IMG/VR virus record: IMGVR_UViG_3300043418_000072
Location: 124,001 to 188,000 of that record
Length of the DNA stretch: 64,000 nucleotides
Reading direction: 5' to 3' (one strand)
Below, piece after piece: positions 28,079 through 47,144 of this stretch; position 1 is the stretch's first letter, and the number at the start of each line of letters is the position of its first letter. The notes beneath the pieces were generated by a model, which was given only the letters and a program-made list of their open reading frames with translations, was not told the origin of the DNA and searched no databases. A program made the position numbers and the translations under genes.

Positions 28079-28365
28079 AGCCATTTCAACTTGATAAACG
28101 CCAGCAGGTCTTCACGCACAATGTAGATAGCACGGTGCCTGCCGCCGTATATTCTCCAGCGTTCTTTTCCGCCGTTTTCTTCAATCCAGTCACCAAACCA
28201 ATAGCTACAGTTTAACCGACTCCACACATGGCCGTCGTCTTCTTTAAACCCGTACTCGCAGCCTGGCTCAACATAATACAGTCTATCGCCGTGTACCATA
28301 TCATGTTTTGGGTCATGCTTGGACCGAATCCACTCTTGTGAATTAGATCTAGGTCTTTCCATCAT
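28075..28365 (-). CDS. W-cassette
   Basis: Ends FIKLKWL. Confidence 0.75.
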   Translation of the reverse strand: MMERPRSNSQEWIRSKHDPKHDMVHGDRLYYVEPGCEYGFKEDDGHVWSRLNCSYWFGDWIEENGGKERWRIYGGRHRAIYIVREDLLAFIKLKWL

Positions 28366-28574
28366 GCCCACCTCAGTGCAAACATTGCAGCATCTTGTTC
28401 TCGTGCAAAGTAGTATATACGATTTTCAGGGTTAACAAAATCCACTCCGTAATAATCGTAGTCCATATTTAAAATATTGTCCAGCAACCATATACGCAGG
28501 TCTCTAAACTGTCCAGTACTGCGCCATGGTACAGTGACTCGAATTGTACACCAATATTTCTCATGCCGACTCAT
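28362..28574 (-). CDS. W-cassette
   Basis: Ends EQDAAMFALRWA. Confidence 0.8.
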   Translation of the reverse strand: MSRHEKYWCTIRVTVPWRSTGQFRDLRIWLLDNILNMDYDYYGVDFVNPENRIYYFAREQDAAMFALRWA

Positions 28575-28591
28575 GACCACCTCAGTACAAA
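28571..28591 (-). repeat. LRWS junction repeat (minus strand TT[GC/TA]..[T/C]TGAGGTGGTCATGA)
   Basis: 12-mer TCATGACCACCT exact at 28571, 28807, 29324, 44853, 45737, 45964, 46212, 46433; many near copies. Confidence 0.95.
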
Positions 28592-28810
28592 CCATTCAGC
28601 GTCTTTTTTATCACGGAAATCAAACCATTCAATATCAAATGTACCGTCAATGGTTTCACTGCCCATGAACCCTGGGTGATCCTTGCCATAAGTCCAGCGT
28701 TTAAGATTGCCATTATGTACTTCCGGTGGCCCAAAGTTCTTGGTCATCCAATACCACATTTCAGACATTTCTAAAATCGTTCGCTGAGTATTCTTAGTAT
28801 AAACTTTCAT
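28571..28810 (-). CDS. W-cassette
   Basis: WMTKNFGP, ends WFVLRWS. Confidence 0.8.
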   Translation of the reverse strand: MKVYTKNTQRTILEMSEMWYWMTKNFGPPEVHNGNLKRWTYGKDHPGFMGSETIDGTFDIEWFDFRDKKDAEWFVLRWS

Positions 28811-29052
28811 GACCACCTTAATACAAACCAAGCAAACTTCTTTTCATCAATGACATTGTACCCAACTATCTTGTTATGGTACCCTGACAACAGTATCTCT
28901 ACACCGCACACAGTTTCTAGAAAATGCAAGTAAGCATCTTCTTTGATTTGGCCAGTGACGACCTTTGCTTCTGGCGGCAATATGATAGGCTTTTTAAGAA
29001 ATTCGTTATTAGCCTGTCTGACTACAATCTTTTTTACAAGGTCTAAATCCAT
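28807..29052 (-). CDS. W-cassette
   Basis: Ends WFVLRWS. Confidence 0.8.
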   Translation of the reverse strand: MDLDLVKKIVVRQANNEFLKKPIILPPEAKVVTGQIKEDAYLHFLETVCGVEILLSGYHNKIVGYNVIDEKKFAWFVLRWS

Positions 29053-29327
29053 TAACTCCACCTTAGTACAAACAACGCATACTCTTGCTCACATAAGAAC
29101 TTGAACGTATACCTGCCAGTGTATCTCCATTGGTCACCGGCAACGAGTTCTTCTTCACGCTCGGCACTTATAAGTTTGCACCCGCGTTCTCGCAACCATC
29201 TGTATGCTTTGACATATACACTATAGCTAGGCACAGTGTGATACAACCAGTTATTACAAGATGCACCCTCGCATCTATGCTCGTGGCGACAAATATCATC
29301 CCACTCTAACTTAACGGTATCTGTCAT
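29052..29327 (-). CDS. W-cassette
   Basis: Ends LFVLRWS. Confidence 0.8.
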   Translation of the reverse strand: MTDTVKLEWDDICRHEHRCEGASCNNWLYHTVPSYSVYVKAYRWLRERGCKLISAEREEELVAGDQWRYTGRYTFKFLCEQEYALFVLRWS

Positions 29328-29662
29328 GACCACCTCAACACAAACAGAGTTAAGTCTTCCTTACTTGTAAACCAGAACTCGCGTCCAAATATTTGATATT
29401 GCGCTGTAGTGTTCAGGTGTATCCATTTCACAACCTCTGCTATTTGGTGGTTGCCTGGTGTAGCAAACTTGTCGCTAGTAAACGGTGCCTTGACCCATCC
29501 TTCTAACATAAGTCTTTGCCTTTTGATAGTGTTGACAATTTCGTCATCGATCTCTTTTTGCAATGCTGCTCCAACCTCTTGCCATACTTCGTCGTCCTCT
29601 GGCTTCTCAATGGTCCATTTGACTTTGATGGCACGAGTCTTTGCTGCAATAGTTTGTTTCAT
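29324..29662 (-). CDS. W-cassette; N-terminal major-capsid-like segment
   Basis: IAAKTRAIKVKWTIE; ends LFVLRWS. Confidence 0.8.
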   Translation of the reverse strand: MKQTIAAKTRAIKVKWTIEKPEDDEVWQEVGAALQKEIDDEIVNTIKRQRLMLEGWVKAPFTSDKFATPGNHQIAEVVKWIHLNTTAQYQIFGREFWFTSKEDLTLFVLRWS

Positions 29663-30078
29663 GACCATTTTAGTAACAGCATTGAATACAGTTCTTCGTG
29701 TATATTGTAGTTGTTGAACGTGGGGTGACCAAATCGCAGTGCGCCTGTGTTGTAGTGACGGCACCACATATCGGGGTCTTGCTCTTGCACCCACCCGCTA
29801 ATAGTTGAAGGACGACAATGCACAGTGTACCATGTAGCACCAGCTAGAGCAAACGTATCTAACTTCTGGATTTGCTCCTTAATACCCATCTCGTAGTATC
29901 TGCTCTTTAGCATTTGGTAAGTCATTGTGGACTTGCCAGTTTGTCTACCTCCGGCAAAAATCATCATTTCATCAGGATGTATTCCACCTGAGATGTTTTG
30001 AAAAACAGATGAAGACCCGCGCGGCATTACTGCTTCCATTGTTTCAATATCCAGTACTACGGTGTTGCGTTTTGTCAT
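29659..30078 (-). CDS. W-cassette; N-terminal helicase Walker A-like segment
   Basis: IFAGGRQTGKST; ends MLLLKWS. Confidence 0.8.
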   Translation of the reverse strand: MTKRNTVVLDIETMEAVMPRGSSSVFQNISGGIHPDEMMIFAGGRQTGKSTMTYQMLKSRYYEMGIKEQIQKLDTFALAGATWYTVHCRPSTISGWVQEQDPDMWCRHYNTGALRFGHPTFNNYNIHEELYSMLLLKWS

Positions 30079-30278
30079 AGCCATCTCATTATAAAAAGCA
30101 TCTTATGTTCTTCCTTAGAGAACATAAACATACTGTCAAGATATTCCCAATTCTGCCCGTAGTGCTCACGTAGCCAGTTACTAATTTGATACCAAGTACC
30201 GCCGGGAGTATACCAATCTCCTGTACGCTTAAAGCGCACATGGTACGGATATAGTTCTCTTGTAGTTTTGGTTCTCAT
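30075..30278 (-). CDS. W-cassette
   Basis: WLREHYG, ends LFIMRWL. Confidence 0.8.
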   Translation of the reverse strand: MRTKTTRELYPYHVRFKRTGDWYTPGGTWYQISNWLREHYGQNWEYLDSMFMFSKEEHKMLFIMRWL

Positions 30279-30637
30279 TGGGCCCACATCAATGCTGCTA
30301 TTGTAGCATACTTTGTCTTTCCTACCCGAAACTTAATATCCAGAGTATCTATTTCATCTGTCCAAAATCCAAAAGTTCCCATTCTCCATTCCCAATCAAT
30401 GCCCTGACGCCCAACATGCTCTTCTAACCATGGGCGATAGTGATCGTTTGGATCAGCGGAGTCGACGATTACCTCTTCGCCATCAGGATCACAACCCAGA
30501 GAAATTGGGCCATTGGGCCAAATGACCCCAATGCTAGTGCCAGGCACAATGGTCCAGTAAAACCATTCTTTCCATTCTATAAACTTACCAAATTTTACCC
30601 AATCGCATAGCCTGTTCCAGAGATTCCGATCATCCAT
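30275..30637 (-). CDS. W-cassette with N-terminal extension
   Basis: WLEEHVG, ends AALMWAQ. Confidence 0.7.
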   Translation of the reverse strand: MDDRNLWNRLCDWVKFGKFIEWKEWFYWTIVPGTSIGVIWPNGPISLGCDPDGEEVIVDSADPNDHYRPWLEEHVGRQGIDWEWRMGTFGFWTDEIDTLDIKFRVGKTKYATIAALMWAQ

Positions 30638-30638
30638 A

Positions 30639-30869
30639 TTATTTCCATTTCAATGCAAAGAAGGTTGCATCTTTGCGATGTTTAAAGTAGAAAAATGTTG
30701 TGCCAAACGCACTAGCCATGCACCATGTGCCTAACCCTTCCCACTCAACTGGCTTGGACCAAACGTGGTTGCTATAACGAGGATTAGACCCAATATTGTG
30801 CTCGCACCATTCTTCCATTTCACCCTGTAAGTGATAACGATCTTTACCAAATTCAACAGTAGTTGTCAT
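30639..30869 (-). CDS. W-cassette
   Basis: WCEHNIG, ends FFALKWK. Confidence 0.8.
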   Translation of the reverse strand: MTTTVEFGKDRYHLQGEMEEWCEHNIGSNPRYSNHVWSKPVEWEGLGTWCMASAFGTTFFYFKHRKDATFFALKWK

Positions 30870-31099
30870 GACCATCTCAACATAAAAATTGTTCTATCCG
30901 ATTCATTAATAAAGCCCCAATGCTGTTCAGCCCTGTCGCTCCAGCTACCCTGTTTGTTTAACAGCACGGTGCGATATTCCTGTATCATCCAAAGGTAATA
31001 AGGAGTTTCGTAATGATTTACGTTCATCATGTAGTACTCACGTGATTTAGCGTAGTAGGGATCTCGTTCGCAGTAAAATTGGACTAGGTCTGTTTTCAT
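30866..31099 (-). CDS. W-cassette
   Basis: Ends IFMLRWS. Confidence 0.8.
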   Translation of the reverse strand: MKTDLVQFYCERDPYYAKSREYYMMNVNHYETPYYLWMIQEYRTVLLNKQGSWSDRAEQHWGFINESDRTIFMLRWS

Positions 31100-31356
31100 G
31101 ACCATCTCAGCAAAAACGCTACCCTATCTTCATCATTACGAAACCAAAACTTTGCATTGTTAGCATACCAACGAGCACCGGGTTCCCATACACCCATTTC
31201 TGCACTGGCACCAAAGGTTTCTACACACCATGCTAACATATTGCGCCAATTGGTATTTGTGTCATTTAAGCTACTAGGAATCCACCAATCAAAGTCTGGT
31301 CTAACCGTGTAGTAGCGAGCTCCGTGTATGCGCCCTTCTAACAATTCAAACTTCAT
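31096..31356 (-). CDS. W-cassette
   Basis: WCVETFG, ends AFLLRWS. Confidence 0.8.
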   Translation of the reverse strand: MKFELLEGRIHGARYYTVRPDFDWWIPSSLNDTNTNWRNMLAWCVETFGASAEMGVWEPGARWYANNAKFWFRNDEDRVAFLLRWS

Positions 31357-31576
31357 TGCTTGCTTTCAGTGCAAACCAAGTTATGATTTCGTTATTCAGG
31401 CAATCGTGTCGAATCCATACACCATCGGGCGCACTAAACCATTCGCGGTCCACAAGCGGCATCGTGATACGGTTGTCACTAATGTGCAGGCGGCACAGGT
31501 CAATTTCCTCACTGCCCCATATAAAGTCCTTGGGAACGTGTTTGAATTTAAAAAATCGGTGAGTCTCGCTATACAT
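31346..31576 (-). CDS. W-cassette, variant tail
   Basis: WFALKA. Confidence 0.7.
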   Translation of the reverse strand: MYSETHRFFKFKHVPKDFIWGSEEIDLCRLHISDNRITMPLVDREWFSAPDGVWIRHDCLNNEIITWFALKASNEV

Positions 31577-31833
31577 TACTTTGCCCACTTTAGTGCGAAT
31601 AGCACTGCTTCTTCATCACATTCAAACTCAATGAACTTTTCACGAAGATACCCGGGACTGTGGTAGTAAGGATGGCGTGTGTTTGCTTTAAGCCATTCAT
31701 TGACTATATAATCCTTGTAGCTGATTTGCCATTGTGCTGGGACACCATCAATGGTGTGTGCATAGACAACACGGTGCAACACGGGAAAATTAACACCTGG
31801 GAATAACGGATTAGTTTTATAAGTTACTGCCAT
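31576..31833 (-). CDS. W-cassette
   Basis: Ends IEFECDEEAVLFALKWAK. Confidence 0.8.
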   Translation of the reverse strand: MAVTYKTNPLFPGVNFPVLHRVVYAHTIDGVPAQWQISYKDYIVNEWLKANTRHPYYHSPGYLREKFIEFECDEEAVLFALKWAK

Positions 31834-32051
31834 AACAATCCAAACAGTGTTGCATCTTCATCCCGATAAAAACGAATCGCCCATCGTTCGTCGCCATATC
31901 TGCCGGGCCCTTTGTTAACAATAGCAACACGGACGATGCAGGAACGTTCTTGAGGAAAGTGTGCGTCAAGCCACTTTTGTAGAGTTTCCATAGAGAACGT
32001 GCGACTGCCATTCATTAAGGTTGGGTATGGAATTTCAAGCAACTGCTGCAC
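31824..32051 (-). CDS. W-cassette
   Basis: Ends DEDATLFGLLWQ. Confidence 0.8.
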   Translation of the reverse strand: MQQLLEIPYPTLMNGSRTFSMETLQKWLDAHFPQERSCIVRVAIVNKGPGRYGDERWAIRFYRDEDATLFGLLWQ

Positions 32052-32391
32052 CTTGCCTTAAATAGTACCAAGCCAAGCGACTTTCTAATAAGTCATAAAA
32101 TGCTCTAGCTTCGTGTTTGTGAAAAAACACAACTCCCCCAACCACATACATGTCTTCCCATCCGTATGTCATATCAGACCGTTGAAAATAATTTTTTTCG
32201 CTAATCCACAGTGTTTCTAGTTCGCCATTGTTTAGCGTAATGCCCAGGCCAACTTCACGGCATCCAATGTCTCGGAACAGAAGATCAACTAACTTGTCTC
32301 GCTGTCTAGCATTATGTGCAAAGTTATTCTCAGCCCATGTCACTAACCAAGTGTTGTTAGGAAGATCTGTGAGTTTAAAAGGATTAGACAT
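32035..32391 (-). CDS. Hypothetical protein within array
   Basis: No clear W tail. Confidence 0.7.
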   Translation of the reverse strand: MSNPFKLTDLPNNTWLVTWAENNFAHNARQRDKLVDLLFRDIGCREVGLGITLNNGELETLWISEKNYFQRSDMTYGWEDMYVVGGVVFFHKHEARAFYDLLESRLAWYYLRQGAAVA

Positions 32392-32392
32392 G

Positions 32393-32674
32393 CTATGCCC
32401 ATTTCAAACTAAACATTAACAGATCGCTTTCGCGGCGGAATACAAAGATCAAATCTGAGATATCTTCAAGATTGTCATCGTTGTCGTAGTACTCTTCTTC
32501 CTCTTCGTCGCTGCCTGGAACTAGTACTTCTTCATAGCAGTACCAATCTTCGGCGCCCAGCCATGTATTGTTTGCATGTCGCTTGCTACCAGGGCCAACG
32601 TTAGCGTTGAGCCATGCTTCGATTTGATCTAATTGATCGTGATGCTTGTGTGCTAGTTTAAGTTTATAACTCAT
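32393..32674 (-). CDS. W-cassette with acidic insert
   Basis: WLNANVGP, ends MFSLKWA-TAG. Confidence 0.8.
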   Translation of the reverse strand: MSYKLKLAHKHHDQLDQIEAWLNANVGPGSKRHANNTWLGAEDWYCYEEVLVPGSDEEEEEYYDNDDNLEDISDLIFVFRRESDLLMFSLKWA

Positions 32675-32940
32675 GTGAATTTCATTACTAAAAATGTATA
32701 GGCTTTTGTAGCTTCTTCTAAGTTACGGTATTTCCAGTGTGTGCCAGCTTGCCCGCTGCGGCAGCGAGTTGGGTCAATCACATCGCGAACTTGCTCGGGG
32801 AAACTTTTCTCCCCTGCAGGTCGTTCTCGGTCCATCCAGTAATCATATGTCATCTCGACACGATAATGCACCTTGTCGCTTTTGCGATGGCGCCATTTGA
32901 TTAATCGGAAATTCTCGCCGCGGTGGATAATATTGTCCAT
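32671..32940 (-). CDS. W-cassette, variant tail
   Basis: EEATKAYTFLVMKF. Confidence 0.6.
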   Translation of the reverse strand: MDNIIHRGENFRLIKWRHRKSDKVHYRVEMTYDYWMDRERPAGEKSFPEQVRDVIDPTRCRSGQAGTHWKYRNLEEATKAYTFLVMKFT

Positions 32941-32941
32941 A

Positions 32942-33418
32942 TCATTCAGTTCCCAAAATATTCCACATACCCAATTGCTCTTTGAGATGTCTATTCTCTG
33001 CTTGTACCTTGTCAATTACTTCGTGAGCTTTTTCAGCTTCTCTAACTGCGTAAAGGTGATTGGATTTTGCAGAGTCAATTGCCCGCTGCGCATCTACTAG
33101 AAGTTCTGTAACGGTGCGTCGACTTAACTTATCAAGTTCTTCACGAGCATCCGCTAAATCCATTTCGGCTACCGCACGGTCATCTTCTGCGTAGGCAACC
33201 ATCTTTTGCAAGTGGGTGATGTAATCTCCGGGGTAGTAGTCTTGGTGATCGTCTGTAAAGACCCATGTGTTAGGATCCATGCCTGCTTCGACTAAATCAC
33301 CAACAAGCCCACCGTTAGGTGCAGACAGCATGTTGATTAATCGTTTGACCAATGGATCAGTGCTAGTCAAATCCAAGTAGCGTAGCAGCTCTACGTCAGA
33401 TAGATGATTTAGATTCAT
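32942..33418 (-). CDS. Coiled-coil hypothetical protein
   Basis: Heptad-like C-terminal half. Confidence 0.7.
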   Translation of the reverse strand: MNLNHLSDVELLRYLDLTSTDPLVKRLINMLSAPNGGLVGDLVEAGMDPNTWVFTDDHQDYYPGDYITHLQKMVAYAEDDRAVAEMDLADAREELDKLSRRTVTELLVDAQRAIDSAKSNHLYAVREAEKAHEVIDKVQAENRHLKEQLGMWNILGTE

Positions 33419-33725
33419 GTTTTAAAATCTCGAATAGTGTTGCATATTCAACCCAGGGTTCCATGTGAAAGCCTTTGCCCCACACTGCCCAGAATCGTTG
33501 TTTGTAAACAGTGCGTAACCAAATGCGATTACCACCTATTGTTTTAACTGGCCAAAGTGCAAACGTCTTGCGCCATGGGTAGCAGTCAGGCCCGTTGTAA
33601 ATTCGTTCAGTTATGTCCAACTCCACAGTCTCCGATCCTATTAGCAATGGCGCAATGCCTGTTGGGTTCTTGTCCCACTTAAGGCGATGTTCTCCGATTC
33701 GGCCATTTTTAAGACGAACTTTCAT
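33396..33725 (-). CDS. Hypothetical protein
   Basis: WRKTFALWPVKT. Confidence 0.65.
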   Translation of the reverse strand: MKVRLKNGRIGEHRLKWDKNPTGIAPLLIGSETVELDITERIYNGPDCYPWRKTFALWPVKTIGGNRIWLRTVYKQRFWAVWGKGFHMEPWVEYATLFEILKHESKSSI

Positions 33726-34006
33726 TAATACGAATGTGTTACCGACTCAGTATAGATTTGTTGTAGTAGATGGATTCTACCTGCGTACCGTAATTGTAAC
33801 ATACATTCACCTTTATCGTCAAATGTGGTTAGTTTTATAACCCCGGGCGAGCTGCGGTAGTGATAGACCTGCCCGCTGGTTTCAATACGCTGATGCTCAC
33901 CTTGCTGGGCGTCTAGTTGTATGCCATTGTTTTTGCAGTAGTCTACATCAGACTGGTCGGGGATAACATTGTGATCCAACACCCAAATTCTTACTATAGT
34001 TAACAT
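33725..34006 (-). CDS. W-cassette-like variant
   Basis: MLQLRY; similar to 48754..49047. Confidence 0.6.
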   Translation of the reverse strand: MLTIVRIWVLDHNVIPDQSDVDYCKNNGIQLDAQQGEHQRIETSGQVYHYRSSPGVIKLTTFDDKGECMLQLRYAGRIHLLQQIYTESVTHSY

Positions 34007-34263
34007 ACACTATCCGCAAAACTCAGAGCAAACATAATAGCAGCTTGTTCCCATTCAAATTGAAATGTAGTGTATTCACTATCCCAAGTTTTTGTGCCTC
34101 CACGCCAATCAATGTAGTAGCGTTTGAAATAGCCCTTATCGCCTGTTGGATAGTCGTCGCACCACTTCATCATAGCATTGACTTCAGGCGAGTTCTTTTT
34201 AATACGCACCTTATATCTAAAGTCGGGGTACTGATTCCCGCCACCGCCGTAAAATAATTCCAT
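34000..34263 (-). CDS. W-cassette
   Basis: KWCDDY, FEWEQAAIMFALSF. Confidence 0.75.
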   Translation of the reverse strand: MELFYGGGGNQYPDFRYKVRIKKNSPEVNAMMKWCDDYPTGDKGYFKRYYIDWRGGTKTWDSEYTTFQFEWEQAAIMFALSFADSVC

Positions 34264-34481
34264 TAGCTCCACCTCAACACAAACATTGTAGCATCTTCTT
34301 CCCTGCGAAATTTAATCCATCCACCATGGCTATCCCAAGTGCCATTACCTAATGCTAGTCCCGGGTGACCGAATGTGGTCCAGCACCATCCGTATATTTC
34401 GCTCATCTCTGGACCTTGTGGACTGTAGTACATTTCCCACTCGTAGTATCGGTCCGGGCGATGTTTGAATTTAATATTCAT
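34263..34481 (-). CDS. W-cassette
   Basis: WCWTTFG, ends EEDATMFVLRWS. Confidence 0.8.
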   Translation of the reverse strand: MNIKFKHRPDRYYEWEMYYSPQGPEMSEIYGWCWTTFGHPGLALGNGTWDSHGGWIKFRREEDATMFVLRWS

Positions 34482-34897
34482 TACACACTCCAGTATAGAC
34501 TAAACATTACAGCATCTTGCTCATTGTTAAATGCAAAAAATAGAATGTTGTGGCTTAGACCCATGCACCCTTGCGTCCATTCGCCATCCCAACTCTTGTC
34601 AACTGGGAGGATATCTTCTCTCCATTTACCGGTGGCATTTGCTGCGCACCACGTGGTCATGTTATCAACTACGGTGATCCATCCTTGGCCATGCCGCCGT
34701 TCCAGTGGCACTGTGTCGTCAAACGGGACGAGGTAAGGGTAGCCACGATACACGTCCTTACGAATACTACCACCACGTGCGCAAAAATCAGGATCATTTA
34801 TGAGATCAAACTGGCGCTGAGTCCATCCCTTCTTCTTAAGGTAACGGGCATGTCGCCATGCTTGAAACCTACCTACCGTAGCGTGTAGTAACTTCAT
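34481..34897 (-). CDS. W-cassette with N-terminal extension
   Basis: Ends EQDAVMFSLYWSV. Confidence 0.75.
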   Translation of the reverse strand: MKLLHATVGRFQAWRHARYLKKKGWTQRQFDLINDPDFCARGGSIRKDVYRGYPYLVPFDDTVPLERRHGQGWITVVDNMTTWCAANATGKWREDILPVDKSWDGEWTQGCMGLSHNILFFAFNNEQDAVMFSLYWSV

Positions 34898-35084
34898 CTA
34901 GTGTTTTCTTTGCTATTTTTCCTGACGGATGATCTGGGTGCATACGTGCGATATCATCTAGTGCAGTCCACATCAACTCGTGTTCGTGTTGTTGCTGGTA
35001 TACCTTATCCCGCAAGCGACTGGCATCCATAATGCTTAGGACACCAGCAATTAACTTGGGAAGGATACGAGCAAGGAATTCCAA
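34869..35084 (-). CDS. Hypothetical protein
   Basis: Start uncertain; ends in TAG. Confidence 0.55.
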   Translation of the reverse strand: MEFLARILPKLIAGVLSIMDASRLRDKVYQQQHEHELMWTALDDIARMHPDHPSGKIAKKTLDEVTTRYGR

Positions 35085-35312
35085 TTATAAGTACTTCAAT
35101 CTAAACATTGTTTCTGCTGCGTCATTGAAGAAGTCTAAGTAGACAGTAGTGATGTAACCTGTTTGTTCTCGGTAAACCTGATGATGGCGGTCGGTGAATC
35201 CTAACTCACGCTTCATTACAGATCGCAAGAGCCAAACACTAGGCTTGTCTGCGTACTCAATTTTAATCTGAGCTCGGATCTTGCGCCACTCAGTATCGGT
35301 TAGTGTGATCAT
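35085..35312 (-). CDS. W-cassette
   Basis: Ends TMFRLKYL. Confidence 0.75.
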   Translation of the reverse strand: MITLTDTEWRKIRAQIKIEYADKPSVWLLRSVMKRELGFTDRHHQVYREQTGYITTVYLDFFNDAAETMFRLKYL

Positions 35313-35541
35313 ACTTTAACTTGAAAAAGGTTGCATCCTCATCTTTAAGTTTAGCAGTTACTCTGTAACGAAGAGAGTATGAGTGGTAATCGTTGCACTT
35401 GCTCCATTGCGGGGTTTCAATTGCATTAGCCATAACCCATTTCCCTGCATCACTTTGCTGCCATTCCCATAGAGGCCATGCGGCATAAAGGTCCGGGTCA
35501 TCAACATCCCCCACTGAAAATTCATGAACAGCTAGAGTCAC
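35290..35541 (-). CDS. W-cassette
   Basis: DEDATFFKLKY. Confidence 0.75.
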   Translation of the reverse strand: MTLAVHEFSVGDVDDPDLYAAWPLWEWQQSDAGKWVMANAIETPQWSKCNDYHSYSLRYRVTAKLKDEDATFFKLKYDHTNRY

Positions 35542-35720
35542 CGCCATTTTAATGCAAATAGTGTAGCATCAGAGGGACTAGAGAAATCAAACCTATACGT
35601 GGGATTGTTACCCAGCATACTGTTTAAGTCTATTGTCCATCCCTTAATACCAAATTGTTGTCTGCACCAGCCGCCCGCCTCAAGCGCCTTATCGGCACCA
35701 TTAATTGTGATAGAGTTCAT
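35538..35720 (-). CDS. W-cassette (first of array 1)
   Basis: WCRQQFG, ends LFALKWR. Confidence 0.8.
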   Translation of the reverse strand: MNSITINGADKALEAGGWCRQQFGIKGWTIDLNSMLGNNPTYRFDFSSPSDATLFALKWR

Positions 35721-35726
35721 AGTACT

Positions 35727-35755
35727 ATTATACACTAAATGCCTTTATGCGTCAA
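35727..35755 (-). promoter_or_regulatory. sigma70-type promoter heading W-array 1
   Basis: TTGACG-17-TATAAT. Confidence 0.8.
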
Positions 35756-39675: not shown

Positions 39676-39803
39676 TCTTTATCTCCTTTAACACAAGAAA
39701 TTTTGTCCGGGCTATACATCAACACAAAGTTACCAATATTAAATGATCCTAAAATTGATAGGCATAACACAAATCCGCCAATTGCTGCAAGGAAGGTTTT
39801 CAT
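39672..39803 (-). CDS. Small membrane protein (43 aa, not in track)
   Basis: Starts at FGVEE junction. Confidence 0.6.
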   Translation of the reverse strand: MKTFLAAIGGFVLCLSILGSFNIGNFVLMYSPDKISCVKGDKE

Positions 39804-40123
39804 TCTTCAACTCCAAACTTTTTACTCAATCGTTCAAATTCGGCTTTTTCAGCTTCTTCACGTTTGCGGTCATACTCAGCTTGTTCAGCTAGGCGCTTGT
39901 TAAATTCTTCATCGTTTTCTTCACGCACTATATACAACTCATAACGAGGTGATGGGTCGTTATCGTAATCGTAATAGAAGTTTCGATTATAGTCAAGCCG
40001 TGCATCCGGTCCATGTTCTCGGATCATTGCCTGCACACGCTCCAACACTGTTGCTAGTGTACCTTCAAACTCCCATGTGGAGACATCGTCCACCATGTCG
40101 TTAATTTTTCTACGTTGGGTCAT
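39800..40123 (-). CDS. Hypothetical protein with FGVEE tail only
   Basis: Ends KKFGVEE. Confidence 0.75.
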   Translation of the reverse strand: MTQRRKINDMVDDVSTWEFEGTLATVLERVQAMIREHGPDARLDYNRNFYYDYDNDPSPRYELYIVREENDEEFNKRLAEQAEYDRKREEAEKAEFERLSKKFGVEE

Positions 40124-40147
40124 TCTTCAACTCCGAAGGCTTTATTG

Positions 40148-40444
40148 CTACACAAATGCGATGCCCGATGACATAACGGCATAAACATCACAGGCGTTAT
40201 CAGTAAAAATGCCTCTTACTAGGTAACTTTCTTTTTCTGTTCCTACCATCAGTTTTGGCTCAAATGTATCACGATCCAATACCGTGCATTCAACATTTTC
40301 CGCAATAACTCTGTAATAGTTAGATGCTTTAGTAACTACCTGTTCTGTTACGGGTTTGCCATAATTATCAAAGGTAATTTCTTCGTAATGGTTGTAGATA
40401 TCATCTAATACACCCTGTGGGATTTCTTCACGATTTATAATCAT
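40148..40444 (-). CDS. Hypothetical protein
   Basis: Ends in TAG; followed by orphan FGVEE repeat. Confidence 0.7.
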   Translation of the reverse strand: MIINREEIPQGVLDDIYNHYEEITFDNYGKPVTEQVVTKASNYYRVIAENVECTVLDRDTFEPKLMVGTEKESYLVRGIFTDNACDVYAVMSSGIAFV

Positions 40445-40695
40445 TATTCAACTCCAAAATGTTCTTTTATATCGTTCGCACACAACATCGCACCATCAGT
40501 CACTGAACCTAAAATTCCCTTATAAGCACGGTCGTAGCACAACTTAGCACATTCCCGAACAATCAACTCGGCGAACTTTTCTAATCCGGGATTATCTGGA
40601 TCTTCTTGCCACATAGGCAATTCTTTACCCAAAGAATTCCATAATCTTTGTTTCAATCCTGCCTGTTCAGCAAGTTGTTTAATTCGTTCGTTCAT
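40444..40695 (-). CDS. MNERI...HFGVE family protein
   Basis: MNERIKQLAEQAG, FAELIVREC. Confidence 0.8.
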   Translation of the reverse strand: MNERIKQLAEQAGLKQRLWNSLGKELPMWQEDPDNPGLEKFAELIVRECAKLCYDRAYKGILGSVTDGAMLCANDIKEHFGVE

Positions 40696-40952
40696 TCTTC
40701 AACTCCGAAATGTTCTTTAATCCTGTCTTTGATAACTTCAGAAACATTGCCATTGATACCATCTTCACGAGTATACCAAACCTGCTCCAAACATTCTTTC
40801 ACCAGCAGTCGGGCGAATTGTTCCACATCCATGTCGCCACCGTGAACAAACTTGTGTCCTGTGTAGACACTATCACCGTTAGCTTGTTCAACATAGCCAC
40901 CCTGCCAGATACCACCTGATTGGATGGCAAGTTCGTTTATACGCTTGTTCAT
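40692..40952 (-). CDS. MNERI...HFGVEE family protein
   Basis: MNKRINELA, FARLLVKEC. Confidence 0.8.
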   Translation of the reverse strand: MNKRINELAIQSGGIWQGGYVEQANGDSVYTGHKFVHGGDMDVEQFARLLVKECLEQVWYTREDGINGNVSEVIKDRIKEHFGVEE

Positions 40953-43162: not shown

Positions 43163-43174
43163 GTTTTGGGCAAA

Positions 43175-43579
43175 TTAGTTTTTGTAGAGAACCGCAACTT
43201 TGGGGTAAGTACAACCTTCGCAACTTTGAAACAACACCCGGTCGTTGCCAATTTCATACTCTACATAGGTGTAGTGGCGATCCACATAGCTCTTACCAGA
43301 CTTTTCACGCGAACCTTCAGCAACGAATCCAACTAATGTACCAGTAACCTGTGTATTTTTGTAGTACTTTGTACTCTGGTCTGTCCACTCATAACTAACC
43401 ATGTAAGCAATTCCTACTGGAATCAACAAGATTAAAAGTACATTAAACAATTTGTATTCTTCTTCACCAGTGATATTAGAGTAAGCTGCCATCAAAAATA
43501 CAACTAACATGAATACACAAACGATAACGAAACCTTTGTGGTCAGTTACAATTGGTGCTAGTGGTTGCATTGTGTACAT
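43175..43579 (-). CDS. Membrane protein
   Basis: Two TM segments. Confidence 0.75.
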   Translation of the reverse strand: MYTMQPLAPIVTDHKGFVIVCVFMLVVFLMAAYSNITGEEEYKLFNVLLILLIPVGIAYMVSYEWTDQSTKYYKNTQVTGTLVGFVAEGSREKSGKSYVDRHYTYVEYEIGNDRVLFQSCEGCTYPKVAVLYKN

Positions 43580-43607
43580 GATAGTCCTGTTTGCTTGCTA
43601 TGTGTAT

Positions 43608-43636
43608 ATTATACAACCAAAACCATTATTGGACAA
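43608..43636 (-). promoter_or_regulatory. sigma70-type early promoter
   Basis: TTGTCC-17-TATAAT; shared leader. Confidence 0.75.
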
Positions 43637-43659
43637 CCAAAATTAGTACTACAAAAGTA

Positions 43660-43989
43660 TTAGTTTTGTAATGCCGCCCACATGTGTTTCTTTTCTAGGC
43701 GCTCAATGAATAGTGTGCGCACACGGTCTTGATCATTTAGCCAGTCTTGTACTACTGCTGGATTGCCCCAACACATGTTAGGTGCCACATTAGACATCCA
43801 TTTAGCAATCGGGACTAGGTGATCCTTGTTAACCGAGTCACAACGGCATGCTGCCGCAGTAAAATTGTTTTCCAATACTGCCTTTAAAAACCCGCCTGGC
43901 ATGTATCCGCGGATAATATAATCCTCAAACGCATCTTGCGTGTGACTTGGTACATTGTAGTGTTCCCACTCTAGCCATCGTTTTGTCAT
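43660..43989 (-). CDS. Conserved phage hypothetical protein
   Basis: YIIRGYMPGGFLKAVLENN. Confidence 0.75.
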   Translation of the reverse strand: MTKRWLEWEHYNVPSHTQDAFEDYIIRGYMPGGFLKAVLENNFTAAACRCDSVNKDHLVPIAKWMSNVAPNMCWGNPAVVQDWLNDQDRVRTLFIERLEKKHMWAALQN

Positions 43990-43990
43990 T

Positions 43991-44170
43991 CTAACTCCAT
44001 TTTAAAACAAACATCATTTCATCCTCGGGCGTGTCAAACTCAACCATAAAGTACAAGTAATCGTCTTTACGGTAGCTGTCATGAAAATGCCCATTGGGAA
44101 TATCACTGAGCCCGCTTTCAATCATGCGTTGCTGAATGTTGACCCAGTCAATCATACGGTACGTTAACAT
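43991..44170 (-). CDS. W-cassette (59 aa, not in track)
   Basis: ...VEFDTPEDEMMFVLKWS-TAG. Confidence 0.75.
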   Translation of the reverse strand: MLTYRMIDWVNIQQRMIESGLSDIPNGHFHDSYRKDDYLYFMVEFDTPEDEMMFVLKWS

Positions 44171-44171
44171 G

Positions 44172-44462
44172 TCATGCCCACTTTAGTAAGAACCAAGCAT
44201 ACTTTTGCTCGTCGAGCACTGTGGTGATAACCCTCTGTCCACTATTGTGATAGCGATACTCAAACCCATGCACATGTTTACACCATTCCCCAAAACCAAA
44301 GTCTGTGACTGTATCTTTAATCTCAGGCCACTGGCTCCATGCGTTTTGAATTGCAGTTAGTGCTTGATCCTTTGGTGCCATTATTTCCTTACAGAGGTTT
44401 GTGCCGTAGACGCTGTTTAGTTGCATCTTGCGATGCAATTTTGCCCATTCTTCTTTAGTCAT
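44172..44462 (-). CDS. W-cassette; N-terminal PolB motif B-like peptide
   Basis: RKMQLNSVYG; ends WFLLKWA. Confidence 0.8.
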   Translation of the reverse strand: MTKEEWAKLHRKMQLNSVYGTNLCKEIMAPKDQALTAIQNAWSQWPEIKDTVTDFGFGEWCKHVHGFEYRYHNSGQRVITTVLDEQKYAWFLLKWA

Positions 44463-44665
44463 GCAAACCTCAATGCAAACATGGTAGCATATTTTTCATC
44501 AGAAAAATACCAGTCAGACCATTCACCTTCACCGGTTTCCCACACATAAAACCACTCACCTCCATACTCGCCAATATTTTTTTCGCACCACTTAACTCTA
44601 GCCTCAGTGCGTTCATGGTGCCATCCATAGAGTCTGACTTCGGTCATTGGTTCACTTAATGTCAT
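44459..44665 (-). CDS. W-cassette
   Basis: WCEKNIG, ends MFALRFA. Confidence 0.8.
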   Translation of the reverse strand: MTLSEPMTEVRLYGWHHERTEARVKWCEKNIGEYGGEWFYVWETGEGEWSDWYFSDEKYATMFALRFA

Positions 44666-44856
44666 AGCCACCTCAATGCAAACAGTGTAGCATCTTCTTC
44701 TTTATGAAACCAAAATGTTCGGATAGTGTCCCATGCCCGACGCTTGCCATTAGGTTCCGGTGGTCCAAAGTTATCCAAGCACCACTTCCACGCGACCTGT
44801 GTACCACTTTCCCCGTATACATCACGAAGTTTCTTGCTGATTTTAATTTCAATCAT
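44662..44856 (-). CDS. W-cassette
   Basis: WCLDNFGP, ends LFALRWL. Confidence 0.8.
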   Translation of the reverse strand: MIEIKISKKLRDVYGESGTQVAWKWCLDNFGPPEPNGKRRAWDTIRTFWFHKEEDATLFALRWL

Positions 44857-45101
44857 GACCACCTCAACATAAACCAAGAGTACAATTCTTCGTCTTCAAA
44901 CTCGATCCAGTGCAGAACACTACTTTCAAATAAGTTGCCCACCTCTTCCATGTAGTACACTGCACGGTACTCAACCAGTGCTGCATTAACATAAGCGTCG
45001 GTTACTGCCTGTGGTCCCACTTGTTCTTGCAGGTGTGCAACAAATTTGTTCCACACAGGGATAGGTGCATAGTCTTTAACAAGATCCAATCGTATCATCA
45101 A
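44853..45101 (-). CDS. W-cassette
   Basis: Ends WFMLRWS. Confidence 0.8.
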   Translation of the reverse strand: MMIRLDLVKDYAPIPVWNKFVAHLQEQVGPQAVTDAYVNAALVEYRAVYYMEEVGNLFESSVLHWIEFEDEELYSWFMLRWS

Positions 45102-45265
45102 AACCTCAGCGCAAACTCTGTGGCTTTTAACGGGTCACGAAAACGAAAGTCCCAGCCACAGCCATCAGAACTGCACACCCAATCATTATAGTCGAGATTG
45201 GCATGGCACCATTCTGCCCCGCTGGTGTAATCATCAATTGTTACTATTGCCCATTTCGCCATCAT
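45098..45265 (-). CDS. W-cassette
   Basis: Ends EFALRF. Confidence 0.75.
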   Translation of the reverse strand: MMAKWAIVTIDDYTSGAEWCHANLDYNDWVCSSDGCGWDFRFRDPLKATEFALRF

Positions 45266-45543
45266 AAGTGCCTTAATGTAAACATAATTAGATTTTCTTC
45301 TTCGAAGAAGTCTGCATAACGCTTGCTGTATTCTGTATAAATGCGGCCACCACATGACCAAACATAATGATCAAACGCTTGACCAGCACCATAACGTAAG
45401 TTAAGTCGATCAAAGTGGTCAATCCAATGTCCCGAGGTCTTATACCCATTGTTTGCAGCCCACTTCTGGAAGATAGTGTTTAGCTGGTCGGATTCAATAC
45501 GTGCCTTTTTCATAAGGGAGTCTCTTGTATATTGCTTTTTCAT
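45262..45543 (-). CDS. W-cassette
   Basis: Ends MFTLRHL. Confidence 0.75.
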   Translation of the reverse strand: MKKQYTRDSLMKKARIESDQLNTIFQKWAANNGYKTSGHWIDHFDRLNLRYGAGQAFDHYVWSCGGRIYTEYSKRYADFFEEENLIMFTLRHL

Positions 45544-45740
45544 TTATGGATCAATGCAAACATTATAGCATCTTTTTCATTTTCGAAGTAAACGCCATGT
45601 CCTCCCATGCTAAAATGTCCGATTCCATCAAACTCTTCGCACCAAAGCAATGCCTCTATCCAACCAATGGTTTTTTGGTTTTCAGATAATGGAATGTATG
45701 TGTAGTCGCAATCCATTAGCATAGTTAGCTCTTGCTTCAT
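45540..45740 (-). CDS. W-cassette
   Basis: FENEKDAIMFAL. Confidence 0.75.
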   Translation of the reverse strand: MKQELTMLMDCDYTYIPLSENQKTIGWIEALLWCEEFDGIGHFSMGGHGVYFENEKDAIMFALIHK

Positions 45741-45967
45741 GACCACCTCAACATAAACATTGTCATGTGTTGTTCGTCAGGAAACGATACCCACAACTCG
45801 GGTTTGCGACCAACTGGTCCAACCTTAACAACATTGTAGTCTTGCTTGAGCCAATCCCAAATAGTTATGTGATGCCCGTCGTTGTTGTGTATGTCACGAC
45901 CAATGTTGTCCCAGTAGTAATTGGCAATCTTCTGAAAGTATGGGCGAATGTCTTTGCGTAGTTTCAT
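45737..45967 (-). CDS. W-cassette
   Basis: Ends MFMLRWS; close to 46433. Confidence 0.8.
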   Translation of the reverse strand: MKLRKDIRPYFQKIANYYWDNIGRDIHNNDGHHITIWDWLKQDYNVVKVGPVGRKPELWVSFPDEQHMTMFMLRWS

Positions 45968-46215
45968 GACCACCTCAACACAAACATGGTATAGTCGTGC
46001 TCGTCTTTGAAGGTCACTACAAATCTATACCCACTGTCTTTACCTTCAATACAAGCACCGACTTGAGCAATTTCTTCTTCAAGGATATGGTCCACCAATG
46101 CCGGAGGTGCGGACTTTTTAGTAATACGGCGTGCCCATACATCTGCATACCAACGCTCGAAGTAATTCCTGGGTTGTTTACAGTTGATGTTTTGGTAATA
46201 CTCTTTTACAATCAT
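45964..46215 (-). CDS. W-cassette
   Basis: Ends MFVLRWS. Confidence 0.8.
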   Translation of the reverse strand: MIVKEYYQNINCKQPRNYFERWYADVWARRITKKSAPPALVDHILEEEIAQVGACIEGKDSGYRFVVTFKDEHDYTMFVLRWS

Positions 46216-46436
46216 GACCACCTCAACACAAAGTAAGTTAAATCTTGTTCAGTGCTAAACACAATGCACTTGGTTTCGTTATTCCAGTGTGCATTGTAGT
46301 CTCTGAGAAACTCTTCTCCCGAGAGGGGAGCACGGCGGGTCTTCATCATCTCAGGTTCTATCACTGCTCTATAGAAGTTTTTGTATGCCATTGGGCTTTG
46401 GTCGTAATCGTCGGATATGTAAAGAGTTGTACTCAT
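46212..46436 (-). CDS. W-cassette
   Basis: Ends YFVLRWS. Confidence 0.8.
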   Translation of the reverse strand: MSTTLYISDDYDQSPMAYKNFYRAVIEPEMMKTRRAPLSGEEFLRDYNAHWNNETKCIVFSTEQDLTYFVLRWS

Positions 46437-46645
46437 GACCACCTCAGTATAAACCAATTGAGTGTTTTCTCATCGGGAAATGACACCACTATCTGCTGGC
46501 TGGCTGCACTGCCAAAAGTGTGGCTAATACCGTACTCACGGCCAAGCCAATCCCAGACACTAATATTAGACTTGTATAGATCATCCCAATAGTGGTTAGC
46601 AACCTTCTTGAAGTAGGGATAGATGTCTGCATAGATTTTAGTCAT
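46433..46645 (-). CDS. W-cassette
   Basis: Ends WFILRWS. Confidence 0.8.
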   Translation of the reverse strand: MTKIYADIYPYFKKVANHYWDDLYKSNISVWDWLGREYGISHTFGSAASQQIVVSFPDEKTLNWFILRWS

Positions 46646-46926
46646 GCCCACCTCAACAAGAATACTGCACGATCACGCTCGTACTTGAAGAAGATTGTTT
46701 CAAATCTCCAGATCCAGTCACGCCCAAAATGTTCTTCACACCACAGCATAACTTCTTCAAACGGTGCGGCACCATTAAACTGCCAGCAGGAGAAACAGTG
46801 ACACACAATATTAACGGCATCTGCGTCATTGGTGTACAGGCAAGGAGTCTCTGCAACAAACTCACGCAGGCGCAGGCGAAGAGTGCCGTAGATTGAATCA
46901 ATTTGCAGTGTGTCTTTTACTATCAT
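46642..46926 (-). CDS. W-cassette
   Basis: WCEEHFG, ends VFLLRWA. Confidence 0.8.
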   Translation of the reverse strand: MIVKDTLQIDSIYGTLRLRLREFVAETPCLYTNDADAVNIVCHCFSCWQFNGAAPFEEVMLWCEEHFGRDWIWRFETIFFKYERDRAVFLLRWA

Positions 46927-47144
46927 GAAAATCTCAACATAAACAACAAATAGTCGTGCTCATTCTCAAAGTAGAACTTGGTAGTCTCTGGATCTTTATC
47001 AATGGCGTTCCATTCGGATAGTGCCTGCGTGATAGAGTCGGCCTCATTGAAATCGTACCCTTGTGTTTCGGCATAGTCGCGAAAGTTTTCCCACCAATGC
47101 TTGCGTCCAGTGCCAGTTTCAGAGTCGATGTCTAGCTCAATCAT
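46923..47144 (-). CDS. W-cassette
   Basis: Ends LFMLRFS. Confidence 0.8.
   Translation of the reverse strand: MIELDIDSETGTGRKHWWENFRDYAETQGYDFNEADSITQALSEWNAIDKDPETTKFYFENEHDYLLFMLRFS

What the first reader, a model, noticed from the sequence alone, without database searches (positions are those of the whole stretch)
28362..47144. The LRWS tail is also a near-perfect Shine-Dalgarno plus ATGA overlap, conserved as DNA across both arrays
Seen: TTG AGG TGG TCA TGA. The 12-mer occurs 8 times exactly (chance expectation about 0.004 in 64 kb), and the 21-mer TTTGTGTTGAGGTGGTCATGA at 29324, 45964 and 46212. Known: GAGGUGGUC pairs with the 16S tail GAUCACCUC over 9 nt with one G-U. Inferred: each cassette carries the RBS and start of whatever follows, so cassettes can be added, lost or reordered by recombination at the junction and stay expressed - an integron-like array with no integrase visible.
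Basis: partly seen in the sequence, partly recalled or inferred. Interest (0 to 1): 0.8.

Follow-up and report, generated by a model that had tools for sequence, protein, structure and literature searches.

The report
Dual-coding gene junctions in phage arrays
In a 354-kb freshwater phage, dozens of small related genes sit head to tail, the last codons of each also serving as the ribosome-binding site and start of the next, and related phages carry the same genes in different numbers and orders.

Summary
AGGTGGTCATGA occurs 8 times exactly and the 15-mer 13 times within 2 mismatches, all on the minus strand and all at gene junctions.

The junctions belong to an uncharacterised family of small proteins (about 59-140 aa). 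The window holds 35-38 copies, and at least 3011 clusters exist in metagenomes. The domain always ends at the C-terminus, in F.LRW[S/A/L].

The tail is selected as DNA. Its Arg codon is AGG in 15 of 19 copies and never CGN, yet AGG is 2.4% of Arg codons in the large genes. Conserved columns further upstream follow normal codon usage. Across 124 tails from related phages, AGG appears only where a start codon overlaps the stop (70/102 against 0/22). This fits an embedded Shine-Dalgarno site with ATGA translational coupling, which is a known mechanism.

Cassette order is not fixed. A relative with about 90% DNA identity differs by whole-cassette insertions and deletions, with hybrid junctions. 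More distant relatives carry the same cassettes in other orders.

No integrase or attC-like hairpin was found. The array resembles modular shuffling in T4-type phages (PeSL elements) more than an integron. That the tails themselves mediate the recombination is inferred, not shown.

The parts
43991..47383 (-). [quoted passage not shown] They lie inside an operon-like run from the gene starting at 47930 down to the stop at 43660.
   Evidence: HMM hits; tails and junction DNA; promoter-like sites flanking the run; contigs from an RNA library, 100% identical, spanning several junctions.
26773..31365 (-). Array A: 16 family cassettes detected by HMM. One intervening ORF (30275-30637) was not detected.
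31576..35744 (-). Seven scattered family members: 31576-31857, 31824-32057, 32393-32722, 34000-34311, 34263-34499, 34481-34897, 35538-35744.
   Evidence: The tails at 34263 and 32393 are shown.
29324..29344 (-). Exact 21-mer junction (..F V L R W S stop, with the next ATG overlapping the stop).
   Evidence: Predicted pairing with the anti-Shine-Dalgarno tail is -14.1 kcal/mol.
45964..45984 (-). Exact 21-mer junction.
46212..46232 (-). Exact 21-mer junction.
44853..44867 (-). Exact 15-mer junction.
45737..45751 (-). Exact 15-mer junction.
28571..28585 (-). Junction with 1 mismatch (CTG for TTG); contains the exact 12-mer.
28807..28821 (-). Junction with 1 mismatch (TTA); contains the exact 12-mer.
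46433..46447 (-). Junction with 1 mismatch (CTG); contains the exact 12-mer.
28362..28376 (-). Junction variant; the tail is LRWA, with GCA as last codon.
46642..46656 (-). Junction variant; the tail is LRWA, with GCA as last codon.
44662..44676 (-). Junction variant; the tail is LRWL, with CTA as last codon.
30866..30880 (-). Junction variant with AGA for Arg.
   Evidence: Predicted pairing is -7.4 kcal/mol.
31096..31110 (-). Junction variant with AGA for Arg.
47959..47987 (-). Sigma-70-like promoter match (11 of 12 positions), about 29 nt upstream of the ATG at 47930. It is the likely start of the transcript that carries array B.
   Evidence: This is a consensus match only, not evidence of function.

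Best explanation
The window comes from a 354-kb uncultured freshwater phage. It holds tandem arrays of a much-expanded, uncharacterised family of small proteins whose alpha/beta domain ends at the extreme C-terminus in a helix reading F.LRW plus one more residue.

The genes are packed with 4-nt (ATGA) or 1-nt (TAATG) stop/start overlaps. The last five codons of each gene are therefore also the translation-initiation region of the next. Leu-Arg-Trp written as TTG AGG TGG gives GAGGUGG, complementary to the 16S 3' tail and 5 nt from the AUG. The last codon must end in A to supply that AUG.

Selection therefore acts on two levels. The protein needs F, L and W. The mRNA needs AGG, a codon that is otherwise nearly avoided, and NNA as the last codon. 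Ribosomes finishing one cassette are held by the embedded Shine-Dalgarno site and restart on the next, or new ribosomes load there. A long promoter-poor array is thus translated cassette after cassette.

Every cassette is flanked by the same 12-21 nt core, within 20-45 nt of similar tail sequence. Homologous or microhomology-mediated recombination, or template switching, between tails would delete, duplicate and move whole cassettes while keeping frame and expression. That would explain why related phages differ in cassette number and order.

Shown here: the motif, the overlaps, the codon bias and its dependence on an overlapping start, purifying selection on the cassettes, and variable number and order with breaks at the junctions. 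Inferred: that the site acts as a Shine-Dalgarno site, that translation is coupled, and that the tail itself is the recombination substrate. What the proteins do is unknown.
For: - Motif statistics.
- Junction anatomy.
- Arg codon at the tail position is AGG 15, AGA 4, CGN 0. In 26 large genes AGG is 2.4% of Arg codons, and elsewhere in the same family genes it is 8 of 125. Binomial p is 2e-21 and 4e-15 respectively.
- Tail Ser is TCA in 12 of 15 copies, against 13% genome usage. At TAATG junctions it is AGT, AGC or TCC.
- Control columns F(-15), E(-12) and D(-10) follow genome codon usage, so synonymous sites are saturated.
- Natural experiment over 124 non-redundant tails from 16 loci and the window: with an overlapping start AGG 70, AGA 7, CGN 4, Lys 21; without one AGG 0, AGA 2, CGN 5, Lys 15. 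Fisher p is 6e-10. End-of-array members use CGC or CGT.
- The last codon is nearly always NNA at ATGA junctions, whatever the residue: TCA, GCA, ACA, CTA, TTA, GTA, CAA.
- Predicted pairing with the anti-Shine-Dalgarno tail averages -8.2 kcal/mol at family junctions and -5.0 at other overlapping junctions.
- Window against L003 orthologous cassettes: pooled dN/dS 0.21.
- Family size: 3011 clusters, the domain always at the C-terminus, and 59 of the top 150 ending in LRWS.
- L003 shares about 90% DNA identity in the flanks but has 19 cassettes against 15, with whole-cassette insertions and deletions.
- Hybrid junctions: L003's B2 orthologue ends in TCA, like window B3, and runs straight into B4. 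Window B10 ends in TCA, like L003's extra cassette, while L003's B10 orthologue ends in GCA.
- Reordering in L018, L019 and L025. Each arrangement was recovered from 2-3 independent samples.
- L018 against L019: homology blocks are single cassettes, starting 13-22 nt before the preceding stop and ending within 2 nt of their own stop.
- Published tests show that ATGA pairs are translationally coupled and that the intragenic Shine-Dalgarno site often matters (PMC6728339).
Against: - No expression or ribosome data exist. The RNA-library contigs may include DNA and carry no strand information.
- About a third of the family junctions (Lys tails, and F/H in place of W) pair weakly with the 16S tail, so a strong site is not obligatory.
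- Predicted accessibility of the site is no different from background, 0.34 against 0.42 unpaired. Coupling by unwinding and independent loading therefore cannot be told apart.
- The host, and so its 16S tail, is unknown.
- With no intergenic space, only breakpoints that respect gene boundaries may survive. Breaks at the junctions therefore do not prove that recombination happens there.
- Orthologues from different phages are not fully independent observations in the codon counts.
Confidence: 0.72

Rival explanations
1. Protein constraint plus shared ancestry only. The DNA identity of the tail simply reflects a conserved LRWS peptide inherited from a common ancestor, with no selection on the nucleotides.
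For: F, L and W are conserved across 3011 clusters, and also in members that have no overlapping downstream start. W lies in the predicted C-terminal helix.
Against: Conserved columns upstream have normal codon usage, so synonymous sites are saturated. AGG is 2.4% of Arg codons genome-wide but 79% at the tail. AGG is absent from tails without an overlapping start (0 of 22 against 70 of 102). The last residue varies freely, but its third base is A.
Confidence: 0.04
2. Concerted evolution. Gene conversion or repeated recombination between paralogues homogenises the tails, and the identical 21-mers are conversion tracts rather than products of selection for translation.
For: Identical 21-mers occur in two arrays 16 kb apart. 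A second junction motif (..FGVEE stop) is identical over 19 nt on unrelated protein bodies. This suggests the junctions move or are copied.
Against: Identity stops at the tail and does not extend into the bodies. The same codon choice is found in distant phages (L014, L016, L017). The dependence of AGG on an overlapping start is not predicted by conversion alone. Conversion may still contribute.
Confidence: 0.15
3. A true integron-like system. A site-specific recombinase encoded elsewhere in the 354-kb genome excises and inserts cassettes at the junction.
For: The arrays are promoter-poor cassettes in one orientation, varying in number and order among relatives, with unit-exact boundaries. Only 64 of 354 kb were examined.
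Against: No tyrosine or serine recombinase domain was found among the 32 ORFs of 150 aa or more that were scanned. The junctions have no conserved inverted repeat or hairpin. The shared core is 12-21 nt of coding sequence. The hybrid junctions fit simple crossover in the shared core.
Confidence: 0.05
4. Assembly artefact. The different cassette orders arise from metagenome misassembly across the repeated junctions.
For: The junctions are repeats. One joint in the source sample (45985 to 46212, with only 24 nt on one side) is best explained by the identical 21-mer.
Against: Exact repeats are 21 nt or less, shorter than usual assembly k-mers and far shorter than reads. The same alternative orders recur in independent samples and assemblers: L018/L020/L021, L022/L023/L024 and L025/L026. 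L001, from another sample, is 100% identical to the window over 21 kb.
Confidence: 0.03

Closest known systems
Translationally coupled overlapping gene pairs (ATGA / TGATG) with a Shine-Dalgarno motif inside the upstream gene; termination-reinitiation (Huber et al. 2019, PMC6728339)
   Same: There is a 4-nt stop/start overlap and a Shine-Dalgarno motif in the last codons of the upstream gene. The codon choice of the upstream gene is bent to provide that motif.
   Different: Here the same dual-coding junction is repeated at dozens of consecutive paralogous genes and is part of the family's signature peptide. Coupling itself was not measured.
PeSL-mediated modular shuffling in hyperplastic regions of T4-type phages (Arbiol et al. 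2010, PMC2839356; Comeau et al. 2014, PMC4122927)
   Same: Short conserved sequences recur at the boundaries of small non-essential genes. Close relatives differ by insertion, deletion and replacement of whole genes at those sequences. The flanking elements carry the expression signals for the neighbouring gene.
   Different: PeSLs are intergenic promoter plus stem-loop terminator cassettes. Here the repeat is a coding tail plus ribosome-binding site and start codon, with no hairpin and no promoter. Mini-circles, shown for PeSLs, were not testable here.
Integron gene-cassette arrays
   Same: One-directional arrays of small, mostly promoterless cassettes, expressed from upstream and variable in content and order.
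   Different: No intI, attI or attC. Cassettes overlap by 4 nt and belong to one protein family. Exchange is probably by general recombination.
Conserved boundary or linker sequences between genes of lambdoid phages as recombination points (recalled from own knowledge of the mosaicism literature; not checked here)
   Same: Short homologies at gene boundaries coincide with mosaic joints.
   Different: Those lie between unrelated functional modules, not within tandem paralogue arrays, and are not dual-coding.

Membership tests
Integron | Integron integrase (tyrosine recombinase intI) next to the array | tested here: not met
   Pfam scans of 32 of the 36 ORFs of 150 aa or more in the window found no recombinase domain. 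Only 64 kb of the 354-kb genome was available.
Integron | attC sites: imperfect inverted repeats that fold as hairpins at each cassette boundary | tested here: not met
   An inverted-repeat search over array B found 8 scattered pairs, none recurring at the junctions. The junction is a 15-21 nt coding tail.
Integron | Promoterless cassettes expressed from a common upstream promoter | tested here: inconclusive
   There is no intergenic space inside the arrays. Consensus promoter matches lie only in the flanking gaps. These are pattern matches only.
Translationally coupled overlapping gene pairs | Co-directional genes with a 4-nt or 1-nt stop/start overlap | tested here: met
   Of the 28 family tails listed, 21 end in an ATGA overlap with the next start. 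Most of the rest use a 1-nt TAATG overlap or have the next ATG within a few nt. One search lists 28 overlapping family junctions in the window.
Translationally coupled overlapping gene pairs | Shine-Dalgarno motif in the 3' end of the upstream gene | tested here: met
   GAGGTGG lies 5 nt before the ATG. Predicted pairing is -10 to -14 kcal/mol at 12 junctions. Codon bias is specific to tails with an overlapping start.
Translationally coupled overlapping gene pairs | Downstream translation depends on upstream translation | not testable with these tools
   This needs reporter constructs or ribosome profiling. Predicted site accessibility was uninformative.
PeSL-type modular shuffling (T4-type phages) | Repeated conserved motif at the boundaries of variable genes, with insertions and deletions between close relatives ending at the motif | tested here: met
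   hybrid junctions.
PeSL-type modular shuffling (T4-type phages) | The motif is an early promoter plus a stem-loop terminator | tested here: not met
   There is no hairpin or promoter at the junctions. The motif is coding sequence plus ribosome-binding site.
PeSL-type modular shuffling (T4-type phages) | Excised mini-circles | not testable with these tools
   The available runs are kept as contigs only.
Any curated protein family (Pfam, PHROGs, NCBIfam, PDB) | A significant profile or fold match for the LRWS domain | tested here: not met
   Pfam. PHROGs. NCBIfam. PDB by sequence. PDB by fold: best E 2.2. Only uncharacterised viral proteins matched in BFVD and the Atlas.

The most novel reading that the evidence does not exclude
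The conserved dual-coding tail (protein C-terminus, ribosome-binding site and start codon) may be a portable joint that lets this group of phages excise, duplicate, move and exchange whole small genes, possibly through mini-circles as PeSLs do. It may also capture fragments of other genes onto the family domain: pieces of the major capsid protein and of a P-loop ATPase are fused to it in some members. That would make it a self-expressing cassette-shuffling system built on general recombination, diversifying a large repertoire of small early proteins. A second, unrelated junction (..FGVEE stop) behaves in a similar way in the same genome.
Probability: 0.3. Interest if true: 0.75.

Novelty: new variant of a known kind. 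Interest (0 to 1): 0.5.

Why it matters
This is an unusually clean natural example of one short sequence under two constraints at once. A structural protein tail is also the ribosome-binding site and start of the next gene. The case comes with a built-in control: the codon choice relaxes where no gene follows.

It also gives a concrete, testable idea of how very large phages keep long arrays of small accessory genes expressed while shuffling them quickly. The idea extends the PeSL model of T4-type phages to a coding junction.

Finally, it flags a large family (at least 3011 clusters) that no database describes and whose function is unknown.

Tried and rejected
- **Near-identical phage records.** Megablast of array B against 50,697 phage records found nothing. 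tblastn of a family member found nothing either. The phage is uncultured.
- **Function of the family.** Pfam, PHROGs, NCBIfam, PDB sequence search, Foldseek against PDB, BFVD and the Atlas, and the Atlas feature search gave no lead.
- **Family-wide locus search.** The search for related loci with the family alignment failed because no stretch was conserved enough.
- **Site accessibility.** Folding the mRNA around the 13 junctions showed no consistent sequestration or exposure of the Shine-Dalgarno site, 0.34 against 0.42 unpaired. It says nothing about how coupling works.
- **attC-like hairpins.** None found.
- **Frameshift reading.** I considered a prfB-like programmed frameshift, because the geometry (site, 3 nt, codon, UGA) is similar. 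I rejected it from the sequence: UCA U is not a slippery +1 site, there is no X XXY YYZ heptamer for -1, and the downstream frame has its own AUG.
- **Read-level variants.** Only contigs were available. Several joints land on junctions (44852 to 46433 with 14 shared nt; 46635 to 44857). Their sides are short and they come from other samples, so I treat them as weak support. The 45985 to 46212 joint is probably a k-mer artefact of the identical 21-mer.


Full report
**1. The observation**

The motif is real and far beyond chance.
- AGGTGGTCATGA occurs 8 times exactly.
- The 15-mer TTGAGGTGGTCATGA occurs 13 times with up to 2 mismatches, against 0.11 expected.
- The 21-mer is exact at 29324, 45964 and 46212, and 11 sites lie within 3 mismatches against 0 expected.

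All copies are on the minus strand. Each is the end of one ORF (..L R W S stop), and the next ORF's ATG overlaps the TGA as ATGA.

**2. What the genes are**

*Source.* The window is part of IMG/VR contig UViG_3300043418_000072, 354,098 bp. It is an uncultured freshwater phage with no close relative among 50,697 deposited phage records. Nearly all genes in the region run on the minus strand and are tightly packed.

*The family.* The junctions belong to one paralogous family of small proteins, about 59-140 aa. Its conserved pattern is W(C)..E.FG ... W ... F.F..E.D...F.LRW plus one residue.
- A profile built from 28 members finds 38 ORFs in the window at E<=1e-2 (35 at 1e-3), all between 26773 and 47383.
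- A full profile search finds 3011 clusters (50% identity representatives) at E<=1e-3. The match almost always runs to the last residue. Of the top 150, 59 end in LRWS, 16 in LRWA and 14 in LKWS.
- No Pfam, PHROG, NCBIfam or PDB family matches.

*Fold.* An AlphaFold model of the 64-aa member (pLDDT 75) is beta-alpha-beta-beta-alpha, and the tail lies in the last helix. It matches nothing solved. It matches only uncharacterised proteins of uncultured phages.

*Are they real genes?* Orthologous cassettes in the window and its relative L003 give a pooled dN/dS of 0.21. They are real, constrained genes.

**3. Is the tail conserved as DNA?**

Yes, and the pattern is the one expected for an embedded ribosome-binding site.

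*Arg codon.* In 26 large genes, Arg codon usage is CGT 37%, CGC 26%, CGA 16%, AGA 15%, CGG 3% and AGG 2.4%. At the tail position of the 28 aligned members, Arg is AGG 15 times, AGA 4 times and CGN never. Elsewhere in the same genes AGG is 8 of 125. Binomial p is 2e-21 against genome usage and 4e-15 against the same genes.

*Other tail codons.*

| Tail position | Observed | Genome usage |
|---|---|---|
| Ser (-1) | TCA in 12 of 15 | 13% |
| Leu (-4) | TTG in 15 of 27 | 25% |
| Phe (-6) | TTT in 24 of 26 | 66% |

*Controls.* Conserved columns a few codons upstream follow genome usage: F(-15) is TTT 15 / TTC 9, E(-12) is GAA 15 / GAG 7, D(-10) is GAT 12 / GAC 4. Synonymous sites in these old paralogues are therefore randomised, and shared descent cannot explain the tail.

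*A natural experiment.* I counted 124 non-redundant tails from the window and 16 loci of related phages.

| Junction type | AGG | AGA | CGN | Lys |
|---|---|---|---|---|
| Start codon overlaps the stop | 70 | 7 | 4 | 21 |
| No overlapping start | 0 | 2 | 5 | 15 |

Fisher p is 6e-10 for AGG against everything else. Members at the end of an array use CGC or CGT, for example L003 9331-9579 and L004 18393-18683.

*Last codon.* At ATGA junctions the last residue varies (S, A, T, L, V, Q) but its codon nearly always ends in A. Where the junction is TAATG, Ser is AGT, AGC or TCC.

*Reading.* F, L and W are protein constraints. AGG and the final A are nucleotide constraints. GAGGUGGUC pairs with the canonical 16S tail over 9 nt with one G-U. 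Measured from GAGG, the spacer to the AUG is 5 nt. Predicted duplex energies are -14.1 kcal/mol for the full motif. The mean is -8.2 for family junctions and -5.0 for the other overlapping junctions of the window.

*Limits.*
- About a third of family junctions (Lys tails; F or H in place of W) pair weakly.
- The host is unknown. A two-piece tmRNA of betaproteobacterial type and a TctC gene hint at Betaproteobacteria.
- Nothing here measures translation.

Published experiments show that ATGA pairs are usually strictly coupled and that the intragenic site often contributes (PMC6728339). As a mechanism this part is ordinary.

**4. Are cassettes added, lost or reordered?**

Yes.

*An identical relative.* L001, from another sample, is 100% identical to the window over 21 kb. 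An arrangement is therefore stable within a lineage.

*A close relative.* L003 has a 98% identical ligase, and its flanking DNA is 90-91% identical. Its array B has 19 cassettes against 15. The order is collinear, but whole cassettes are inserted or missing, and the blastn blocks end at cassette boundaries.

Two of these differences leave hybrid junctions:
- L003's orthologue of B2 ends in TCA, like window B3, and runs directly into B4. Window B2 ends in GCA.
- Window B10 ends in TCA followed by the start of B11. That is exactly the end of the extra L003 cassette, while L003's B10 orthologue ends in GCA.

The last codon thus travels with the downstream gene. This is as expected for a crossover in or before the shared GAGGTGG core.

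*More distant relatives.* Reciprocal-best orthologues (60-95% aa identity) appear in other orders, and members of window arrays A and B are mixed. For example, L018 reads 31096, 28362, 44853, 46433, 46212, 44662, 46923, 44172 in window coordinates of the orthologues.

The same 64-aa protein sits between different neighbours in L018 and L019. At the DNA level the homology blocks between these two loci are single cassettes. They begin 13-22 nt before the preceding stop and end within 2 nt of their own stop.

Each alternative order was recovered from two or three independent samples: L018/L020/L021, L022/L023/L024 and L025/L026. Exact repeats are at most 21 nt. Misassembly is therefore unlikely.

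*Contigs from other samples.* They show joints that land on junctions. In the source sample a minor variant (depth 11 against 60) replaces 45125-45260. This evidence is weak, because only contigs were available.

**5. Integron or not**

No recombinase domain was found in the 32 ORFs of 150 aa or more that I scanned. No hairpin recurs at the junctions. The shared element is a short coding tail.

The nearest precedent is modular shuffling in the hyperplastic regions of T4-type phages. There, repeated promoter/stem-loop cassettes (PeSLs) flank small non-essential genes, mediate insertion, deletion and replacement, and form mini-circles (PMC2839356; PMC4122927).

This case differs in the nature of the repeat, which is a dual-coding tail plus ribosome-binding site and start codon.

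Whether the tail is the recombination substrate remains an inference. The alternative is that only boundary-respecting events survive in a region with no intergenic space.

**6. Expression context**

Array B lies in a run of overlapping genes from the ATG at 47930 to the stop at 43660.
- An 11/12 sigma-70-like match lies just upstream, at 47987-47959.
- Further consensus matches lie in the gaps at 48798-48769, 43636-43608 and 43162-43134.
- Contigs from a metatranscriptome library are 100% identical and span several junctions, for example 45653-46387 and 46767-47694.

This is compatible with polycistronic transcripts. It is not proof, since DNA carry-over is possible.

**7. Verdict**

Two of its inferences are supported by new evidence: the tail doubles as a ribosome-binding site, and the cassettes are mobile. 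The integron analogy fails as membership.

The translational part is a textbook mechanism seen in an unusually regular form. The cassette dynamics are a new variant of known phage modular shuffling. The protein family itself is undescribed and its function unknown.

Noticed in passing
window 6221-6239, 6499-6517, 6768-6786, 8299-8317, 39800-39818, 40120-40138, 40441-40459, 40692-40710 (minus strand): A second conserved junction, TTCGGAGTTGAAGAATGA, gives the tail ..FGVEE stop with GGAG 7 nt before an overlapping ATG. It occurs 8 times against 0.01 expected. It sits on at least three unrelated protein bodies (BLASTP finds no similarity). Once, at 40120, it lies outside the frame of the preceding ORF, so there it acts as a plain ribosome-binding site. 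Gly is always the minor codon GGA. The junction looks like a portable unit.
   Followed up: partly
window 27496-27894 (-); also 29324-29662 and 29659-30078 (-); L025:2585-2977: Some family members are fusions. The member at 27496-27894 starts with the conserved N-terminal motif of the T4-type major capsid protein (Pfam Gp23, 27.6 bits against a cut-off of 24.4). Metagenomic relatives do the same (P0080, P0071, P0133). The member at 29324-29662 has a weak Gp23-like piece. The member at 29659-30078 carries a Walker-A fragment. Why capsid-protein fragments are joined to this domain is unexplained.
   Followed up: partly
window 55608-55998 (-): A phage-encoded two-piece (permuted) tmRNA matches the betaproteobacterial model (110 bits). 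ARAGORN gives the tag peptide as ANDSQFLMVA. It hints at a betaproteobacterial host.
   Followed up: no
window 50391-50465 (-): A tRNA with a CUA anticodon (an amber suppressor; ARAGORN labels it Pyl). None of 26 large genes ends in TAG (13 TGA, 13 TAA). Two small family genes appear to stop at TAG (43991, 32393).
   Followed up: no
window 50518-51921, 52672-53691, 150-1109, 23743-24282 (all -) and 2975-3829 (+): Auxiliary metabolic genes: nicotinamide phosphoribosyltransferase, an NMN adenylyltransferase-NUDIX fusion (NAD salvage), a TctC-family solute receptor, an Fe/Mn superoxide dismutase and PhoH.
   Followed up: no
window 48798-48769, 43162-43134, 27285-27257 (minus strand): Perfect or near-perfect TTGACA-N17/18-TATAAT matches sit in the few gaps between the gene runs. 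The one at 27285-27257 ends only 6 nt before the ATG at 27251, which might mean a leaderless transcript.
   Followed up: no
window 45125-45260 and 43644-44008: In the sample the window probably comes from, minor-variant contigs (depth about 11 against 60-80) replace 45125-45260 with 151 other letters. They also skip 43644-44008, which removes the last gene of the array-B run.
   Followed up: no
window 16507-17022 (-) and 57339-57977 (+): A 171-aa ORF matches only a piece of the DNA polymerase III alpha NTPase domain. A plus-strand ORF among minus-strand genes has a weak HNH endonuclease match. Together these may indicate a split or invaded gene.
   Followed up: no
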